A stretch of 50,736 nt of DNA, filler included, from Bipalium vagum (Eukaryota), in assembly GCA_037834085.1 (NCBI GenBank). It is 3 parts of 3 records of this genome, joined end to end, with 100 filler letters (N's around TTAATTAATTAA, not from the genome) between each part and the next. Parts side by side here need not be neighbours in the genome. Positions count along the whole stretch, not along the records: positions 1 to 16,500 come from JBBMKC010108082.1; 2 more parts are not named here. The stretch is one strand, 5' to 3'. The translations under genes were made by a program, and so were the position numbers. Every line of letters begins with the position of its first letter. The first letter of the stretch is position 1. Under the pieces are notes generated by a model. The model was not told the DNA's origin and ran no database searches. It was given only the letters and a program-made list of their open reading frames with translations. Shown here in pieces: positions 1 to 10,472 of this stretch.

Positions 1-221
1 GGGATCTAATCACTCCAGCAGAGCTGCGGCCCATCATAGATAATTTCCCTAAACGTCTTCAGCTGTGTATCAAAGCCAAAGGAGGACATTTTGAAAATTT
101 TTGTTAATTTTGTTAGCTAATATTGTGAAAAATATATGTTATAAAAATTGTGATAATAAATGTTAGTTTCTATGTAAAATGACTGAAACTTTAAGGACGG
201 GTTATTTCTGGTCACTCTGTA
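1..221 (+). mobile_element. 3' end of a Tc1/mariner-superfamily transposon (transposase C-terminus plus terminal repeat)
   Basis: Translates as DLITPAELRPIIDNFPKRLQLCIKAKGGHFENFC*, a typical Tc1/maT C-terminus. It ends in ...GGTCACTCTG-TA (reverse complement TA-CAGAGTGACC). Confidence 0.8.
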
Positions 222-1199
222 ATAAATTAAAATAATGCACCTTTAATAAAGGAACCTTTTAAAATGTAATTGGACATTTTAAAAGTAAAAAATAATAATA
301 TTGAAAAAAACAGAACTTTAATTTTTGAAGCAAGTTATAAAATTTTAAAAATTCTCAAATCTGTTTAAATACCGACAGGCACCGAGTAGAATTTGTGATA
401 TGGTTCTTACTCTGGTGAACCATGGTACATTTTCTTCATATAATTCCAGAATAATTAATTTTGTTTTAATCAATCTTTCAATTACGAGAAAGACAGTGAA
501 AAATTAATCAATCTATCCCGATTTTCTCATTTTCAGCTTGGAGAGTGTCACTAAAAACAATAAAGTTCAGAGAGGCTTTTAAGCCGAAGCAATAAAATGA
601 CAAAAGAAATGATGAAAGAAAACGGTTTTTTATATGAAAAATTTTTTTGTCAAATAAATTATTCTGAAAAGATCTCGAATTACACAGAATCAGATTAAAA
701 ACGCTTGATCCGGATCGGGAAATAAAAGAATGTAAGATGAGATATTGGATCATCATAGCTTGAATTTTTAATATCATTTTTTTATTAATACCAACAAGGT
801 CACAAAAATAAAAGATCGTTTTAAACAAGAGGGAATAAATAATACAAGAAATATATATAAATAAATAAAATCACATTCTCCCCGCTTCCACCTACCTGAC
901 CTCATTATATTTTAATATCTGAAATGTACGTAACAAAATATTAATGACATTCATTGTGAATATTTGTATGAATATCGTTTTTCTTCGAATATATCACGGT
1001 CCCCACTTAGGAGAAGGCAGTTCACTAATTCTGTGAGCAATTAAACAAATGTACATGTTACCACAATGAAAATCCATGTCACCAAAGTAAAGAGACTTAA
1101 GGAGATAGGCTATGTAATTTCAGACAATATATAACAGTGTGATCCTCTATTCAGACACTGAAACCTTCTAAGTATGCAGGTTGCCCGATGTGGATTTCG

Positions 1200-1690
1200 A
1201 ACTGGCAACACTGCATTAATTAGATGTAATCTGGGGTTTTCATAAAGTGTAACCTTGTTTTTATATAAAGAATCGATTTGGGGAAAAGAATTTTGCTGGA
1301 ATTATGAAGATGTAATTCATTTTGAGTTTGTACGAAGTGATCGTTTGGTAAATGCTGAGCTTTACTGTGAACAGCTTGACAGAGTCAATGAAATTTTGAA
1401 AGGAAAATATCCCAGTTTTTATTTCATAGAAAGCGATTGCTTTATCACCATGGCAATTTGTAAGCTCAACGGGAAGCTTTAACGTAAGAGAAATTTACTA
1501 CATTCGATGTGATTGAACTCTTATGTCATCCCCCTTATAGTTCAGAACTTGGACTTCCAGATTTTGTCTTTTTCAGATCGATGGATCACTTTTTGCTGGA
1601 CTTTCTTTACTTCAAAGTCTAAAGAATGATGCGATAAAAAAATTTTAAAAACCGGAATATGAAAATTTTTTTATATAATAACGGTTTTTA
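1200..1690 (+). mobile_element. Decayed mariner transposase fragment
   Basis: ORF 1255-1482 has WNYEDVIHFE...VNAELYCEQLDRV. Downstream sequence encodes HPPYSSEL, the YSPDL motif, with frameshifts. Confidence 0.8.
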
Positions 1691-1730
1691 GTTGTAAAAG
1701 TGATAAAATATGTTTTCTGTTATTTTTTCA

Positions 1731-2620
1731 TAAAGATTCATTCAACAGTGACGCCTGTATGTTAAGGTTAATTAATATAGTATAATAATATAGTATAGTA
1801 TAGTATAATATAGTATAAATACGAATTCATACACGGTGCAACAAAAAATTTTCATCATACAAATCTATTATGAAAATGGACGTCCTGTATGGACGTGATA
1901 CATTTTGTGTTCATCGCCGTCCAGATCAATCTATAATCCGTGGACTAATGAAAGAATTTGAGGAAGCAGGTTGTGTAATTGATAAACGAAAAAAGATATA
2001 AAAGTTGGTACGCTTAACAAAAAACATATGCCTTGTAAAGAAAAAAATTGGAAAATCTCATTTAACATCAATTTTATGCCGTTCTGTTGAACTTGGAATA
2101 TCACAAGGCTGTACATAGAGAATTTTGAGAAGTGATTTGTATTTATATTCATATAAAATTCATAAAAAATATTTTGTTCAGTGATGAAGCTCATTTCAGC
2201 ATGAATGGTTTTGTTACCAAACTAAATTGTCTCATATTGGCTGATATGAATCCTCAGGTTATTCATCAAAAATCTTTACATTAGCAGAAAATCATTATCT
2301 GGTATTTAGTCACAGAATTCGCTGGCGATGACTTTATAAAGGGGTGTCCAAAATCAGCTGTGGTGCAAGTAAACATTGATTTTGTCCAGGAAATGATAAA
2401 GCTTGGTGGTCATGTAACTTTCGGCAAGATTCAGGTGTCATTGAGAATTAAAATGAGTACCATATATTCGATATTTCATGAACAATTGACTGTGAAAAAA
2501 CTGTATTCCCACTGAATCCCGTATAAATTAATTTGGTTCAAAAGTGACTGATATGAATAGGTCGAGAGAAATTCGAAATAAACTCAATTTCAGCACGTCA
2601 AAAGAGGTTTGCAAGATCAT
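1731..2620 (+). mobile_element. Decayed Tc1/mariner remnants (rosa-like copy followed by a mariner fragment)
   Basis: NILFSDEAHFSMNGFV motif at about 2168-2215. The terminus at 1731 (taaagattcattcaacagtgacgcctgtatgtt) matches the terminus at 29961. A mariner-like IFHEQLTVKKL segment lies near 2473-2505. Confidence 0.65.
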
Positions 2621-3162
2621 ATCACAGCCAGTTTCACGCAAAATTCAGGATTTTTTTATCAATCTGACCTTTTCCGGAGAATATTTGTCTTTAATGCATA
2701 ACTGCATTATGAACAAAAACAAAAATCTATTCAATGAAATGGTCACTTTTAAGAAATTGTTTACTGCCAACGGTCAGGTAAAGTATAAATGCTTTATGAA
2801 AGTTCTTTATTTTTACTGGCTAGAAATTTCTAGACGCCAAAACTTTCATAGATCCGCTTCATGATTTCACGTGAAGTTACCAAGCCCCTGAAAAGTTGAA
2901 ACTTGGCATGTTTTTTTAATCTTTTTAATTTCATCGCACACATTTTTACACTACTTGTTCTAGCATCTTCATGATGCAAAATATACTTATTCCTATTGAC
3001 AAACCTAAAACAATGAGATAAAGTTTGATTTCAATAGATTCTTACATTTCCTAATATTATAAATCAATAATTTTAAAAATTTTAATCGAAATCTTAATAA
3101 TTTTTTGCATTGAAATATGTACATAGAAAAGCGATACTTTTCCTTCAACCTTAATCATTAAT

Positions 3163-3468
3163 AAAGAAAGTAACTAATAAAAATAATCTTTTTTAAAATT
3201 AAAAGAAATTAATTACACAAATTAATTTAATTTAATTATTAAAATAAATTTATTAAATTAAATAAATAAATAACACAAAATTTCATTAAGATAAAAATAA
3301 AAATAAAATTAAAATAAAAATAAAGAAAATAACTAATAAAAATAATATTTTTTAAAATTAAAAGAAATTAATAAATAATAATAACAAATAAATTTAATTT
3401 AATTTATAAAATAATTTTATTAAATTAAATAAATAAATAATACAAAATTTCATCAAGACAAAAATTAA
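3163..3468. repeat. Imperfect ~160-bp AT-rich tandem duplication upstream of the lectin gene
   Basis: The segment aaagaaa.taactaataaaaataat.ttttttaaaattaaaagaaattaat...caaaatttcat.aaga.aaaaat occurs at about 3163-3300 and again at about 3322-3468. Confidence 0.75.
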
Positions 3469-3788
3469 GAAACCAGACAATAAGAATATAATATGTAACT
3501 TAAGCTGTTCTAATACCAAAAGGGAATGTGGGAACAGACAATTAAAGCTTGGTTTATTTAATGACATATTTTCATTTAAGTATATACTTTACAGAATTTC
3601 CATAAGCACTCAGGGGACATTTGTTTCTCGAAAACGTTTCAATAGTGAAAAAATATTATAAAATGTTAATGGGCTGAAACTTTCTAACTGTGTTGTCTGA
3701 GTTCCCAAAACCACTTATAAACCCTTCTGGACAAAGGTCGACAATGTTCAAAATCTCCTAATCAGATTAGAAGGTTTTCAGACCCCAA

Positions 3789-3796
3789 TATATAAA
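3789..3796 (+). promoter_or_regulatory. Candidate TATA box of the lectin gene
   Basis: TATATAAA lies about 30-35 nt upstream of the ATG at 3825, in a locally GC-richer context. The background is AT-rich, so a chance match is possible. Confidence 0.4.
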
Positions 3797-3824
3797 TGCA
3801 CAACATTGAGTACCACGAGAAAAT

Positions 3825-6800
3825 ATGGCCACAAACTTCAAATTGATCGTTGCTATTTTCGTTATATTTATTTATGTTGACCTAACCCTCGCAGGTCATG
3901 GTAATTATTATATTTCCGATATTGGCCTAATACGTTTTCCAGATGCGCTGACTGAAGATCAACTGGTTCATTTACCTAAATGCGCCAATTTTACGACAGC
4001 CGTCAGACTTTGTAAAAAGCGGGGCCTGAGTCTTATCAGGATCGATGATGAACAGACCAATGTAAAACCTTTCAATTAATCGGTCCACAATCTATCTTTC
4101 TAATCGCCTTCAGAAAATTGTTTTCCAATTTGCCCAAAGTAAAAAGCTGAACAAATATTGGATAGACGCCACTGATATCGTCGAAGAGGGTGTTTTCCTC
4201 CATAACGATGGCACGAAACTTTCTTACAAGTATGATGTTGACTGGTAATCCTGGGATATGTATTCGTTAAGACGTTGGAGAAAGGGTCAGCCAAACGATA
4301 AAGGAGGAAATCAGGACTGTGCTGTCATTACTAGAGAGTATAAAGGGTTTTGGAGTGATAATAACTGTGAAGATTCGAATGCTGTCATCTGCAGAGAGAG
4401 TAAAGTGTCGCTGGATGACGATCGGTTTTCCGTTCTCCCGGAACGTTTAAGTTTCGAAATGGCTGACAAGCTCTGTAAGAAGAGGAACATGAGCCTGGTC
4501 AGGATTGATGACGCTGAGACTAATGTAAGTCCTCAATTTCTCTTTCAAATTGCAGTTTAAAATGTTCAGCAAGCCGTCCTCAATTATGCTTCAGCAAAAA
4601 AGCTGGTTAATTATTGGATCGATGCGACCGATAAGGACAATGAGGGTAACTTCGTACACATCGATGGTTCGAAACTCGCTTACACGTACGACTTCCTCTG
4701 GCTCTTCGTCGTGGATATTCATTTGGAATCCCTTTATTCAGGAATTGGAAAGGCAACCAGCCGAACAATAAAGGAGGAAATGAGAACTGTGCTCAAAGCG
4801 GGATCGACCTTAATGGGTTTTGGAATGATTTGAACTGCACTGATCCACTCTTTGGAATTTGCAGCACGGCTAAGACGTTATTAAAGCGCGATCAGTTCTC
4901 AATTCTTTCTGAATTCGTCAATTTTGACACGGCCGTCAAGCTCTGTAAGGACAGGGGTATGAGTCTCCTCAGAATTGATGATGCTGAAACAAATGTACCT
5001 ACCCCTTTCTTCTTATGTATTCTCTCTCTATAGATATATTTCTGTTCCCTTTAAGAATCTTGTTCACCAGTACGCCATCAAGAACAAGGTGAAACAGCTT
5101 TGGATAGACGCCAATGACAAAATTAAAGACGGTGAATACGTTCACCTTGACGGAACGAAAGTCGTTTATACGTATCATTTTGATTAAAGACGTTGGTTGA
5201 ACATATTGGTCTTTTTTCAGGAAATGGAACAGAAATCAGCCCGACAATAAAGGAGGAAACGAGAGCTGCATTTATACGGGCATCATTAACGAAGGATTTT
5301 GGAATGATATAAACTGTGCTGCTGCCTTGACCGCGGTTTGCAATACGACCAAAGAACCATTCAAAGACGATCAGTTCTATACCTTACCGGAACCCGTTAC
5401 TTTTGAAATGGCGGTCGACCTTTGTAAGAAGAATGGCATGAACATCATCAGGATTGATGATTCTCACACAAATGTAATAACGTTCAGCTCATCCGTTGAC
5501 AGAATGTCTTTCTAATCACTTCTAGAACCTCGTCTTCAAATATGCCAAAGAGAAGAATTTGCACAAACATTGGATCGATGCCAGCGATAAGGTCCAAGAA
5601 GGTGATTTCGTGCATGTCGATGGGACGAAACTTCACTATTTGTACAGCTTTGATTACCTTTAATAAAGAAATATTCATGTGGGCATTGCCCTGTTCAGCA
5701 ACTGGAACAAAACCGAACCCAACGATAACGCTCATGTACAGAATTGTGTATATAGCGGAGTGTTTCGTCAAGGGATGTGGCATGATTTAGAATGTCATTC
5801 TAAACTGACTGGCATTTGCAATAAGACTAAGGCCTCAATCAACGACGACCCCTTCCATGTTCTACCGAAACCTGCAGATTTTGACACAGTGGTCAACCTC
5901 TGCAAGGAGAAGGGAATGACTCTCATCAGGATCGATGATGCCCAAACAAATGTAAAACATCTCTCTTCAAAGTATTCTCGATTGATAAACTTCTACTAAC
6001 CTTTAGGAGCTTGTTTACCAATATGCCAAGAAGAATAATTTGGACAAACATTGGATTGACGCGAATGACAAGACGAACGAGAGACAGTTCGTACATGTCG
6101 ATGGGACAGGACTCCATTACTTGTACAGCTTTCAATACCTTTAGTAAAGATATATTTATTTGGAATCGCCATGTTCAGCAACTGGAACAAAACCGAACCC
6201 AGCGATAGGTCTCACGGAGAGAATTGCGTATATAGCGGAGCATTTCGACAAGGGTTGTGGCATGACTTTGGATGCAATGCCAGAATGTTTGGAATCTGCA
6301 ATAAGACTAAGATATCAGTCAATGAAGACCCTTTCTACATTTTACCGGAACGTGTTGGTTTTGATACAGCAGTCAGGCTTTGTAACGAAAAGGGCATGAG
6401 TCTTATCAGGATCGACGATGCTCACACAAATGTAATAATACTCCGTTCATGCGTTCTCGACGAACCTTTTTAATCACTTCTAGAAACTTTTTCATCAATA
6501 TTCCATAAAGAAGAACTTGGACGAGCATTGGATCGATGCCAGTGACAAAAACAAAGATGGTGTATTCGTTCATTCTGATGGTACCATGGTCACTTACACG
6601 TACATTTTTATTGTTTTATAATCATTAATATTTACGTCAAATCGTTGGGATCAGCAACTGGGCAAAATCTCAACCAGATAAGAGGGGTGGAATTGAGGAC
6701 TGCGTATTCAGTGGAACTCGCAGAGAAGGGCTTTGGCACGATAGAATTTGTGGTAATCCCTTGTTCGGAGTGTGCAATAAGACTAAAGCACCGATCCATA

Positions 6801-9620
6801 ATGATCAGTTCTTGGTTCTTCCGAGTCTTGTGGATTTTGACACAGCGGTCAACCTGTGTAAGGAGAAGGGAATGAGTCTCATCAGGATCGATGATGCCCA
6901 AACAAATGTAAAACATCTCTCTGCAAAGTATTCTCGATTGATAAAAGTCTAATAACCTTTAGGAGCTTGTTTACCAATATGCCAAGAAGAATAATTTGGA
7001 CAGACATTGGATTGACGCGAATGACAAGACGAACGAGAGACAGTTTGTACATGTCGATGGGACAGGGCTCCATTACTTGTACAGCTTTCATTACCTTTAG
7101 TAAAGATATATTTATTTGGAATCGCCCTGTTCAGCAACTGGAACAAAACCGAACCCAGCGATAGGTCTCACGGAGAGAATTGCGTATATAGCGGAGCATT
7201 TCGACAAGGGTTGTGGCATGACTTTGGATGCAATGCCAGAATGTTTGGAATCTGCAATAAGACTAAGATATCAGTCAATGAAGACCCTTTCTACATTTTA
7301 CCGGAACGTGTTGGTTTTGATACAGCAGTCAGGCTTTGTAACGAAAAGGGCATGAGTCTTATCAGGATCGACGATGCTCACACAAATGTAATAATACTCC
7401 GTTCATGCGTTCTCGACGAACCTTTTTAATCACTTCTAGAAACTTTTTCATCAATATTCCATAAAGAAGAACTTGGACGAGCATTGGATCGATGCCAGTG
7501 ACAAAAACAAAGATGGTGTATTCGTTCATTCTGATGGTACCATGGTCACTTACACGTACATTTTTATTGTTTTATAATCATTAATATTTACGTCAAATCG
7601 TTGGGATCAGCAACTGGGCAAAATCTCAACCAGATAAGAGGGGTGGAATTGAGGACTGCGTATTCAGTGGAACTCGCAGAGAAGGGCTTTGGCACGATAG
7701 AATTTGTGGTAATCCCTTGTTCGGAGTGTGCAATAAGACTAAAGCACCGATCCATAATGATCAGTTCTTGGTTCTTCCGAGTCTTGTGGATTTTGACACA
7801 GCGGTCAACCTGTGTAAGGAGAGGGGAATGAGCCTGATAAGGATCGATAATGTTCATACAAATGTAACACATCTCTCTTCAAAGTGATCAGAATATATGT
7901 CTTCTAATAACCTTTAGGAGCTTGTTTACCAATATGCCAGACAGAATAATTTGACACGACATTGGATAGATGCCAATGATAAGGTCCAAGAACGAGACTT
8001 CGTACATGTGGATGGGACAAAACCGCGTTATTTGTACAGCTTTTGTTACCTTTAATAAATGATTGTTTATTTGAAATCTCCATGTTCAGGAACTGGAACA
8101 AAGGCGAGCCCAACGATAAGGGTCATGTACAGAATTGTGTATATAGCGGGACAGAGCGTCACGGATTGTGGCATGATTTTATGTGCCATGCCAAAATGTT
8201 CGGAATCTGCAATAAGACTAAAGGGCCCCTCAATGATGACCCCTTCTATGTTCTACCGAAACGTGTTGGTTTTGACACAGCAGTCAGGCTTTGCAACGAA
8301 AATGGCATGAGTCTCATCAGGATCGATGATGCTCACACAAATGTAGGACTCCTCGCTTTATTTACTCTTTCAATATTTACATTTCTCACAACCCTTAGAA
8401 CCTTGTTCACCAATATTCCAAAAGAAAGAACGTGAGCCAACATTGGATTGATGCAAATGACAAAATCAAGGAGGGCGAGTACGTCCACATCGATGGAACA
8501 AAACTGTCTTACATGTACAACTTGGATTTTACCTTTTGTCAGTACTTGTTTTTAATTTGAAATGACCTTGTTCAGAAACTGGAACGCAAATGAACCAAGT
8601 GATCGAACTCACATTGAAAACTGCTTATATACCGGAACGGACCGTAGAGGGTTTTGGAACGACAGGAACTGCAGTGATCCGATGTTTGTAATTTGCAATA
8701 GAACGGAACCATTCCTAAACGACAGTCGGTTTTTTGTCCTGCCAGAACTTGTCGACTTCCCAACCGCCGTCCGACAGTGTCAGGAGAAAGGTATGACTCT
8801 GACGAGGATTGACGACCCTGAGACAAACGTAAAACATCTTTCGGTTTTCGAGTTTTCTATATCTCTCAACTGGCTTTAGAAAGTGGTCCTCGACTTTTCC
8901 TTAAAAAAACGGTTGTCGCATTACTGGATTGACAAAACCAAAGAGACAGAACTAGCTCAGATGAATGGCAGCTCGGTTGCTTATACGTAAAACGTTGCTT
9001 GTCTTCATGGTAAATATTTTTGGGAAAATTCTTCGTTTAGCAACTGGTATCCAAAACAAGAAATTCAACCGAAACAAAGTTGTGTGATCAGTGGAATTGG
9101 TTTGAAGGGTCTCTGGTTTAAGGTAACATGTTTGGCGAAATCTTATGGCATCTGCAATGTAACAGCTCCACCACCCGTTGCCAAACAGCTTCCTGACGCA
9201 CCGAAAACGTTCGACTATTCCACGGTCATGAGACTTTGCAAGGAGAAAGGTAATAACCTAATCAGACTCGACCAAGGAGATCTGAAAGTAAAAATGATTT
9301 TCGTTCTTTGTTTTTGTGAAAACGTTGATAGGACTTTATGTTCTTCGATGATTTGAACCTGATGAGAATAAACTTGAAATCTGTGAAGACAAAGATTGAA
9401 AGGATAACCAACGATGACAGCCTTCTCATTTTCAAGTATGATTGTGATCCTTTTCGATGGCTTTGATCGAAATGATTTCAGCAGTGAGAATGGTTCGTTC
9501 GGTCCGGAAAATGAAAGGGGCGATGAGAATTTATCAGAGATTTTAAGATTTAAGAATGAAATCCTGAAATATTTGAAGCTGGAAGGGGATACATATGTGG
9601 TCTGTTATGCAGATGAATAA
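3825..9620 (+). CDS. Secreted multi-domain C-type lectin, 12 tandem CTLDs (10 canonical, 2 degenerate), ~1493 aa, 26 exons
   Basis: All introns are GT-AG, 42-61 nt, and the frame is open throughout. Exons: 3825-3900, 3943-4061, 4114-4229, 4272-4524, 4570-4685, 4742-4994, 5056-5171, 5221-5473, 5526-5641, 5699-5951, 6007-6122, 6179-6431, 6484-6599, 6655-6907, 6963-7078, 7135-7387, 7440-7555, 7611-7863, 7918-8033, 8090-8342, 8399-8514, 8576-8828, 8880-8986, 9041-9287, 9332-9435, 9482-9620 (sum 4482 nt). Signal peptide MATNFKLIVAIFVIFIYVDLTLA. Each domain has F..A...C...G..L..I, WID, W...(E/Q)P(N/D/S), C, W(N/H/S)D..C, C. No TM segment. AATAAA overlaps the stop codon. Confidence 0.93.
5907..7818 (+). 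repeat. Near-identical 956-bp direct tandem duplication (two lectin modules) inside the lectin gene
   Basis: About 5907-6862 matches about 6863-7818. ORF-track translations at offset 956 are identical or nearly so (e.g. 6160/7116, 6645/7601), and the introns are included. Confidence 0.95.
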
Positions 9621-10426
9621 ATGAAACTCTCTGACATACGGTGATGTAAAATTATAAAAGATATATCTTTACTTTATTTTCTTTTTGGAAAATAATTGGG
9701 GTTTGTAAAGAAAATGACTTTTTGATTATATTTTTGGGAAGAAATTAAGTTTGGTGACACTATTTGGATATGTAACTATTCAGAGAAACTAAATACCTTC
9801 AAAAAAGTGTATTTCTCTTTCTATATGTTGATGACATTTTTCTTTCTAAAATAATATAAGAGGTAAGAGAGAGAGAGAGAAACAAAATAAATATTCCACT
9901 CGCTGTTAGGCTCAGTGATGCTCAGACAAAGCTCAAATCGCCGCCATACTAACCTTGTAGGCCAAATAAAAAATCTTACTTAAGAATATGATGAATAAAC
10001 TAAGCACAAGAAAATCTTTATTTGTTCCAATTGACTTGTCGCATCGATTCAGCTTCTGTATTTGTTTAACTTTATTGATTAACTTCACACTTAAGCAGGA
10101 TGCTGTTAAAGAGTGTTGTGATCGATGATCATTTGTCGATTCATCTCAGCAAATGTGAAGTCGGCTAAGTTGGTATTGTTAAACAGGAACGCTTTAAACT
10201 TCGTTCAAATCTAAGCTTTAATTACCAAATGTTCATAATTGATCTTTTCAAATGTTCTTTCAAAAACTGAAAATCTCGTGTTATTTTACTGAATTCTGTT
10301 TTAAGTTTAATATTCAATTATGAATAACAGGATTAACAGTTTAAAGTATCGATTGTTTAAACTGTTCGTATTTAAAGAAAATGAGCGAAAAAATAAAAAT
10401 AAGAGATGACGTGAGACCAGTATTCA

Positions 10427-10471
<45 letters not shown>
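10427..10471. repeat. (AAT)n microsatellite
   Basis: About 15 perfect AAT units. Confidence 0.95.

Positions 10472-10472
<1 letters not shown>

What the first reader, a model, noticed from the sequence alone, without database searches (positions are those of the whole stretch)
3943..9620. Modular lectin array whose exon geometry makes any exon-A/exon-B recombination or skip rebuild a complete chimeric domain
Seen: ten exact iterations of exon A (116 nt, phase 0 to 2) and exon B (253 nt, phase 2 to 0), then two shortened ones. The exon module is out of register with the protein domain. Each CTLD is the 3' part of B(n-1) (helix 1, first Cys) plus A(n) (WID core) plus the 5' part of B(n) (sugar loop, three Cys). 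Any A joined to any downstream B, or any B to any downstream A, therefore stays in frame and gives a full-length hybrid domain. Inference: this is a ready-made diversification cassette for a secreted pattern-recognition or adhesion lectin, working through unequal crossover/gene conversion or exon-pair skipping. Caveat: 42-61 nt introns favour intron definition and constitutive splicing, so DNA-level shuffling is better supported than RNA-level.
Basis: partly seen in the sequence, partly recalled or inferred. Interest (0 to 1): 0.8.

Follow-up and report, generated by a model that had tools for sequence, protein, structure and literature searches.

The report
Twelve-domain secreted C-type lectin gene
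This is an intact animal gene for a secreted protein made of about twelve C-type lectin domains in a row, grown by ordinary tandem duplication; its regular exon pattern is real but inherited by the whole gene family, and nothing shows it to be a special diversity-generating device.

Summary
A + strand gene (3825-9620, 26 exons, 25 GT..AG introns of 42-61 nt, 1,492 codons) has ten exact exon pairs A (116 nt) and B (253 nt), then two shortened pairs. Pfam Lectin_C ends at residue 42 of each B exon, so every lectin domain is built from the end of one B, an A, and the start of the next B.

- Frame compatibility of any A with any B is simple arithmetic, and in-register homologous recombination in any tandem coding repeat keeps the frame wherever the introns lie.
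- The same exon layout (A 116, B 250-253) occurs in at least seven paralogous loci of this genome, with about 2, 5 and 12 domains. It is inherited, not an adaptation of this locus.
- Modules are old (dS 0.6 to saturated) and under purifying selection (dN/dS about 0.2-0.3), so they are not being homogenised or diversified.
- One recent DNA-level event exists: a two-module (956 bp) duplication or conversion with a 695-bp exact tract. At least two of its edges lie inside exon B, not at exon borders.
- No RNA data exist, so exon skipping is untested.

Verdict: a new member of a known kind, of modest interest.

The parts
3825..3900 (+). Exon 1 (76 nt): start codon and signal peptide
   Evidence: It holds the only strongly hydrophobic 19-residue window of the protein. 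An in-frame alternative donor lies at 3894.
3943..4061 (+). Exon 2 (119 nt): N-terminal third of lectin domain 1, equivalent to the 3' part of a B exon
   Evidence: It matches residues 46-84 of a B exon.
4114..4524 (+). Module 1: A 4114-4229, intron, B 4272-4524 (QPN/WSD)
4570..4994 (+). Module 2: A 4570-4685, B 4742-4994 (QPN/WND)
5056..5473 (+). Module 3: A 5056-5171, B 5221-5473 (QPD/WND)
5526..5951 (+). Module 4: A 5526-5641, B 5699-5951 (EPN/WHD). Exon B is mosaic: from 5877 onward it is 97% like the tail of module 6.
6007..6431 (+). Module 5: A 6007-6122, B 6179-6431 (EPS/WHD)
6484..6907 (+). Module 6: A 6484-6599, B 6655-6907 (QPD/WHD)
6963..7387 (+). Module 7: A 6963-7078, B 7135-7387. 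Near-copy of module 5.
7440..7863 (+). Module 8: A 7440-7555, B 7611-7863. Copy of module 6 up to 7822.
7918..8342 (+). Module 9: A 7918-8033, B 8090-8342 (EPN/WHD)
8399..8828 (+). Module 10: A 8399-8514, B 8576-8828 (EPS/WND)
8880..9287 (+). Shortened module 11: A' 8880-8986 (107 nt), B' 9041-9287 (247 nt). The four Cys are kept; the sugar/Ca motifs are lost.
   Evidence: No Pfam hit for B' alone.
9332..9620 (+). Degenerate module 12: exon 9332-9435 (104 nt) and last exon 9485-9620 with stop TAA. A tandem CAG|CAG acceptor (9482 or 9485) keeps the frame either way.
6172..6866 (+). Copy 1 of a 695-bp exact repeat (last 7 nt of an intron, B5, intron, A6, intron, first 212 nt of B6)
   Evidence: Short-read contigs here have depth about 35-40 against 21-25 in the unique flanks.
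7128..7822 (+). Copy 2 of the 695-bp exact repeat, 956 bp (two modules) downstream
5877..6171 (+). Older zone at about 96% identity (13 differences) to 6833-7127. Its left edge lies inside exon B4.

Best explanation
A germline-encoded, constitutively spliced gene for a secreted lectin of 1,492 residues: a signal peptide, ten full C-type lectin-like domains, one weakened domain and one degenerate one.

The ancestral domain already had two internal introns, one after the strand that follows helix 1 and one just before the W..(E/Q)P. loop. Multi-domain members of the family have no intron between domains. Each internal exon B therefore carries the last third of one domain, the linker and the first third of the next.

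The array grew by in-register unequal crossing-over. First it added single 479-bp modules. Later it added a two-module unit that alternates an EPS/EPN-type and a QPD-type sugar loop. A very recent 956-bp duplication or conversion came last. Since then each domain has been kept by purifying selection.

Shown: gene model, domain identity, family-wide layout, divergence, the recent event. Inferred: secretion, multivalent glycan binding with several specificities, constitutive splicing.
For: - Exon model and open frame.
- Lectin_C on B exons, residues 1-42 matching profile 70-107.
- A full-domain match in the relative P0005, co-linear with the model at 36% identity.
- Nearest solved structures are mannose-receptor-family and collectin domains.
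- The only hydrophobic stretch is N-terminal.
- A paralog on contig C105562 has exon 1 of 76 nt, exon 2 of 119 nt and five A116/B250-253 pairs.
- All six other paralog loci have an A exon of 116 nt; five of them have a 250-nt B exon upstream of it.
- Modules cluster within each gene, not across genes.
- dS is 0.63 to saturated and dN/dS is 0.18-0.34 between all modules except the recent pair.
- The 956-bp offset repeat has a 695-bp exact core and mosaic edges inside exon B.
- Independent k-mer contigs cover both contexts of the repeat at single-copy depth and the shared core at about 1.5-1.9 times that depth.
- Multi-lectin-domain proteins are common: 2,262 hits at E<=1e-3, many with 9-20 repeats.
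Against: - No transcript data exist, so expression, the exact splice sites and constitutive splicing are inferred.
- The assembly is a fragmented draft (272,664 contigs), so the copy number in the repeated core could be mis-resolved.
- Domains 4-9 read WHD instead of WND, so calcium-dependent sugar binding is not assured.
- The one recent event shows that the array is not fully frozen.
Confidence: 0.8

Rival explanations
1. The array is a hot spot of unequal crossing-over and gene conversion. It keeps producing new chimeric lectin domains and copy-number variants within populations, as a diversification device for recognition.
For: One recent two-module duplication or conversion with a 695-bp exact tract and patchwork identity around it. 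Paralogs differ in module number: about 2, 5 and 12. Depth of the shared core is nearer 1.5-1.9 times than exactly 2 times the flanks, which would also fit a heterozygous copy-number variant.
Against: All other module pairs are at dS 0.6 or more with dN/dS 0.2-0.3, with no homogenisation and no positive selection. No alternative haplotype contig of the array is in the assembly. The edges of the recent event are inside exon B, so the exon geometry plays no part.
Confidence: 0.1
2. Exon pairs are skipped in some transcripts, giving shorter isoforms with hybrid domains.
For: Any pair skip is in frame. A-to-B donors (GTAC/GTAT) are further from the usual GTRAGT than B-to-A donors.
Against: Introns of 42-61 nt favour intron definition. 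There are no conserved intronic inverted repeats that could bring distant sites together: only two short pairs across 5.8 kb. No RNA run holds the gene, so there is no positive evidence at all.
Confidence: 0.07
3. The near-identical modules 5-6 and 7-8 are an assembly artefact of a short-read draft, and the true gene has fewer (or more) modules.
For: The genome is in 272,664 contigs. A 695-bp exact repeat is hard for short reads. K-mer contigs break throughout 5700-8300.
Against: The two copies sit in different flanking contexts that are each covered at about single-copy depth: 6934-7132 at 20.2 and 7793-7932 at 19.7. The shared core is deeper, at 35-40. The copies differ at 13 sites upstream and diverge sharply downstream.
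Confidence: 0.08

Closest known systems
Mannose receptor family (MRC1, MRC2/Endo180, PLA2R, DEC-205; vertebrate C-type lectin group VI)
   Same: Eight to ten C-type lectin-like domains in a row on one chain. These are the nearest solved structures to the closest full-domain relative. Only some of their domains keep sugar-binding residues (my knowledge).
   Different: No ricin-type or fibronectin type II domain: the signal peptide runs straight into domain 1. There is no transmembrane anchor or tail. Identity is only at the level of the domain family.
Invertebrate multi-C-type-lectin-domain proteins (for example Solemya velum KAL5012958.1, 1,455 aa; Choristoneura fumiferana XP_073943669.1; unnamed UniParc entries P0001, P0005, P0014)
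   Same: Long arrays of lectin domains with short linkers. P0005 is co-linear with the model over 420 residues at 36% identity, with the same '...ETN' junction motif.
   Different: In the bivalve gene each domain is split into about three exons, with introns also between domains, and the gene spans 98 kb. Here the inter-domain intron is absent, there are two exons per domain, and introns are about 50 nt.
Programmed diversity systems of invertebrate recognition molecules (Dscam mutually exclusive exons, snail FREPs, lamprey VLR cassettes)
   Same: Repeated, phase-compatible coding cassettes in a recognition-type protein.
   Different: There are no alternative-exon clusters, no docking/selector pairing elements, no flanking donor cassettes in the window, and no sign of elevated dN/dS. 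The resemblance is only formal.
Known intron patterns inside C-type lectin-like domains
   Same: Introns at fixed places inside the domain are a known family trait used for classification. An example is the set of sites upstream of C1, downstream of WIGL and between C2 and C3 (PMC514892). Here the second intron lies between WID and C2.
   Different: The positions here (after '...IDD.ETN' and before 'NW..(E/Q)P') were compared with the bivalve gene only. That gene is likewise split in three, but its breaks lie about 4-5 codons away. They were not compared with vertebrate genes.

Membership tests
C-type lectin-like domain (Pfam PF00059) | Profile match above the curated cut-off | tested here: met
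   B exons alone score 37.0, 23.3 and 24.4 bits against a cut-off of 22.6; B6 scores 19.3, below it. All matches cover profile positions 70-107. The joined domain was not scanned.
C-type lectin-like domain (Pfam PF00059) | Four conserved Cys (C1 in helix 1; C2, C3 and C4 in the last third) and a WIGL-type motif | tested here: met
   LC(K), W-I-D, (N/D/S)C, W.D..C and (I/V)C are present in domains 1-10. Domain 11 keeps the four Cys.
Calcium-dependent sugar-binding C-type lectins | EPN or QPD triplet plus WND with the acidic residue before C2 | tested here: inconclusive
   Triplets are QPN (domains 1, 2), QPD (3, 6, 8), EPN (4, 9) and EPS (5, 7, 10). WND occurs only in domains 2, 3 and 10; WHD in 4-9; WSD in 1; none in 11. 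Binding itself is not testable here.
Mannose receptor family (group VI) | N-terminal ricin-type domain, fibronectin type II domain, C-terminal transmembrane anchor | tested here: not met
   Exons 1-2 go from the signal peptide directly into domain 1. There is no hydrophobic segment apart from the signal peptide.
Dscam-type alternative-exon diversification | Clusters of mutually exclusive exons with intronic docking and selector sequences | tested here: not met
   Only two short inverted repeats (15-17 nt) in 5.8 kb. Introns are 42-61 nt.
Dscam-type alternative-exon diversification | Many transcript isoforms | not testable with these tools
   No RNA run holds the gene.
Concertedly evolving / recombination-hot tandem arrays | Low synonymous and intron divergence among most repeats | tested here: not met
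   dS is 0.63 to saturated for all pairs except modules 5/7 and 6/8. Introns of older modules are about 30-60% identical.

The most novel reading that the evidence does not exclude
The array is polymorphic in module number and order within the species, and the two-module EPS/QPD unit is being amplified under selection. That would make it a germline-variable multivalent lectin whose hybrid domains arise by in-register exchange.
Probability: 0.1. Interest if true: 0.5.

Novelty: new member of a known kind. Interest (0 to 1): 0.27.

Why it matters
It gives a clean worked example of how a multi-domain lectin grows. The duplication unit is bounded by introns that lie inside the domain, so exons and domains are out of step, and a two-module higher-order unit alternates two sugar-loop types. 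It also corrects an attractive but unsupported idea: frame compatibility of repeated exons follows from tandem duplication and is not evidence for a diversity generator. If population data later showed copy-number or order variation, the locus could be a simple model for lectin repertoire evolution in a poorly studied animal group.

Tried and rejected
- Word search with exon B9 (84 aa): no candidate. This says little, because only proteins of 46-147 aa were eligible.
- Encoding contigs for the best relatives P0001 and P0005: not on record. For the fish MRC1 hit the gene range was too long to fetch, so vertebrate intron positions were not compared.
- My first automatic extension of the paralog model beyond its fifth module was wrong, with stops in 'P06'. 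I make no claim that the paralog shares the shortened 107/247 modules.
- Nematode SL1 leader: absent from the genome, so a nematode origin, suggested by the TTTCAG-type acceptors, was dropped.
- Rfam scan of the window: nothing.
- Inverted-repeat scan for splicing selectors: nothing convincing.
- Search for a second haplotype of the array in the assembly: none.
- The flatworm adhesion-protein literature (PMC8621496) describes single lectin domains joined to vWD/EGF domains. That is a different architecture, so it was not used.
Full report
**Scope and method.** Only places 1-16500 were used. The spliced protein has no stored reference. It was therefore built only inside scripts from the window file, for translation, module comparison and a local comparison with proteins already fetched. 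No family scan, database search or fold was run with the joined protein; those searches were made exon by exon, by reference. That joined step is left out.

**Observation.** The window is AT-rich (12-35% G+C in the flanks) with a 5.8-kb block of about 40% G+C at 3825-9620. Tandem Repeats Finder reports a 480-bp period across 5414-8345.
- A walk that required AG/GT borders and fixed exon lengths found ten A exons of 116 nt and ten B exons of 253 nt in strict alternation. Introns are 42-61 nt.
- Upstream lie exon 1 (3825-3900, start codon and hydrophobic leader) and exon 2 (3943-4061).
- Downstream lie 107-nt and 247-nt exons, then a 104-nt exon and a 136-nt last exon ending in TAA at 9620.
- The model has 26 exons and one open frame of 1,492 codons.
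- Pfam Lectin_C matches residues 1-42 of the B exons to profile positions 70-107 of 107, so a domain ends in the middle of each B exon.
- The remaining 42 residues of B hold the linker, the first strand and helix 1 with the first Cys (…F.VLP….FDTAV.LC.EKGMSLIRIDD..TN). Exon A holds the second helix and the W-I-D motif. The start of the next B holds the (E/Q)P. loop and three Cys.

**What it is.** The only strongly hydrophobic stretch is at the N-terminus, and there are 23 N-glycosylation sequons, so this is a secreted glycoprotein.
- The closest database relatives by a B-exon profile are long multi-lectin proteins. There are 2,262 hits at E<=1e-3 and 46 at E<=1e-30, many with 9-20 matched stretches.
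- The three most alike (P0001, P0005, P0014) are unnamed UniParc entries with 29-36% identity to the model.
- P0005 gives a full Lectin_C match (profile 4-106). Its nearest solved relatives are domains of MRC2, MRC1, DEC-205, PLA2R and collectins.
- Unlike the mannose receptor family, this protein has no ricin-type domain, no fibronectin type II domain and no membrane anchor.
- Sugar-loop motifs differ by domain: QPN, QPN, QPD, EPN, EPS, QPD, EPS, QPD, EPN, EPS. WND is replaced by WHD in domains 4-9.

**The layout is a family trait.** The genome (440 Mb, 272,664 contigs) holds paralogs.
- Contig C105562 carries a gene with exon 1 of 76 nt, exon 2 of 119 nt and five A116/B250-253 pairs.
- All six further loci have an A exon of exactly 116 nt. 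Five of them have a composite 250-nt B exon upstream of it, and these look like two-domain genes.
- The two internal introns and the missing inter-domain intron therefore predate the growth of this array.
- In a bivalve multi-lectin gene each domain is split into about three exons, with introns between domains as well. The fused B exon is thus a trait of this lineage, not of lectin arrays in general.
- Fixed intron places inside the domain are a known classification trait (PMC514892).

**History of the array.** Modules cluster within each gene, not across paralogs.
- Synonymous divergence between modules is 0.63 to saturated. dN/dS is 0.18-0.34 overall and 0.2-0.7 in the sugar-loop third. The domains are old and individually conserved.
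- The exception is an offset of 956 bp (two modules). Places 6172-6866 equal 7128-7822 exactly (695 bp). Places 5877-6171 are about 96% like 6833-7127 (13 differences). Identity drops sharply after 6866.
- A sliding comparison shows that module 4 switches inside exon B from the module 5/7/9 type to a 97% match with the tail of module 6. Module 6 switches inside exon B from identity with module 8 to that same tail.
- So exchange has occurred, but two of its edges lie inside exon B. The third lies at or after the last 7 nt of an intron.
- Modules 5-9 form a two-module higher-order unit that alternates an EPS/EPN type and a QPD type.

**Is the repeat real?** The only public run that holds the locus is DNA, kept as k-mer contigs.
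- Long contigs cover 3750-5717 and 8273-9700 without differences, at depth 21-25. The middle is broken into short contigs.
- The contexts special to each copy are covered at about single-copy depth. The shared core has depth 35-40.
- That fits two copies. It neither proves nor excludes heterozygosity.
- No second haplotype of the array is in the assembly.

**The interpretation.** That any A fits any B is arithmetic: the A plus B unit is 369 nt, phase 0 to 0. At the DNA level, any in-register homologous exchange within a tandem coding repeat preserves the frame and yields a full-length hybrid domain, wherever the introns are. The exon geometry is thus not what makes recombination safe. The observed edges inside exon B bear this out.

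The geometry would matter only for exon-pair skipping or for non-homologous intron-to-intron joins.
- For skipping there is no evidence. No RNA run holds the gene.
- Introns are tiny.
- No intronic pairing elements exist.
- High divergence with purifying selection argues against a frequently shuffled or positively selected cassette.

**Origin.** This is a side inference. Two mitochondrial COX1 contigs of the assembly have AAA at conserved Asn sites, ATA at Ile sites, AGG or AGA partly at Ser sites, and TGA inside the frame. This fits the flatworm/echinoderm mitochondrial code. The nematode SL1 leader is absent. The animal is therefore probably a flatworm; this is not proven. A third, different COX1 shows that a second animal's DNA is in the assembly.

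**Verdict.** This is a new member of a known kind, with a tidy and instructive gene structure.

Noticed in passing
window 1255-1479 (+): Relic of a mariner-type transposase (Pfam Transposase_1, E 1.4e-06), 2.3 kb upstream of the lectin gene. It is a short open piece only.
   Followed up: partly
window 3160-3465: Extremely AT-rich (12% G+C) nested tandem repeats, including a 167-bp unit in 1.9 copies, about 400 bp upstream of the start codon.
   Followed up: no
window 9482-9487: Tandem CAG|CAG acceptor at the last exon. Both choices are in frame and differ by one Ser.
   Followed up: partly
window 5999-6170, place 6047: The independent k-mer contig reads G where the window has A. It otherwise carries the copy-1 letters at 6090, 6111 and 6135. 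This is either an allele or a small conversion towards copy 2.
   Followed up: no
window 10427-10472, 12939-13079, 16353-16500, and an N run near 13080-13240: The right flank (9700-16500) has no open frame of 60 aa or more. It is made of AT-rich simple repeats ((AAT)15, (TTA)n, (TTATA)n at the contig end) plus a masked or gap stretch, which was left untouched.
   Followed up: no
G000 contigs C253947 (L046), C246471 (L047), C253320 (L048): Three different mitochondrial COX1 genes in one assembly. Two read like the flatworm/echinoderm code and are about 80% alike by eye. The third looks like another animal, possibly food, host or contaminant.
   Followed up: partly
window modules 5-9 (6007-8342): Sugar-loop types alternate (EPS, QPD, EPS, QPD, EPN) in step with the two-module repeat unit. 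The amplified unit is therefore a pair of unlike domains.
   Followed up: partly
P0001 residues 1-130: The best-scoring relative begins with a stretch that looks like part of a hAT-type transposase (…TTDGAPAM…) before its lectin array. This is probably a gene-model fusion in its source.
   Followed up: no
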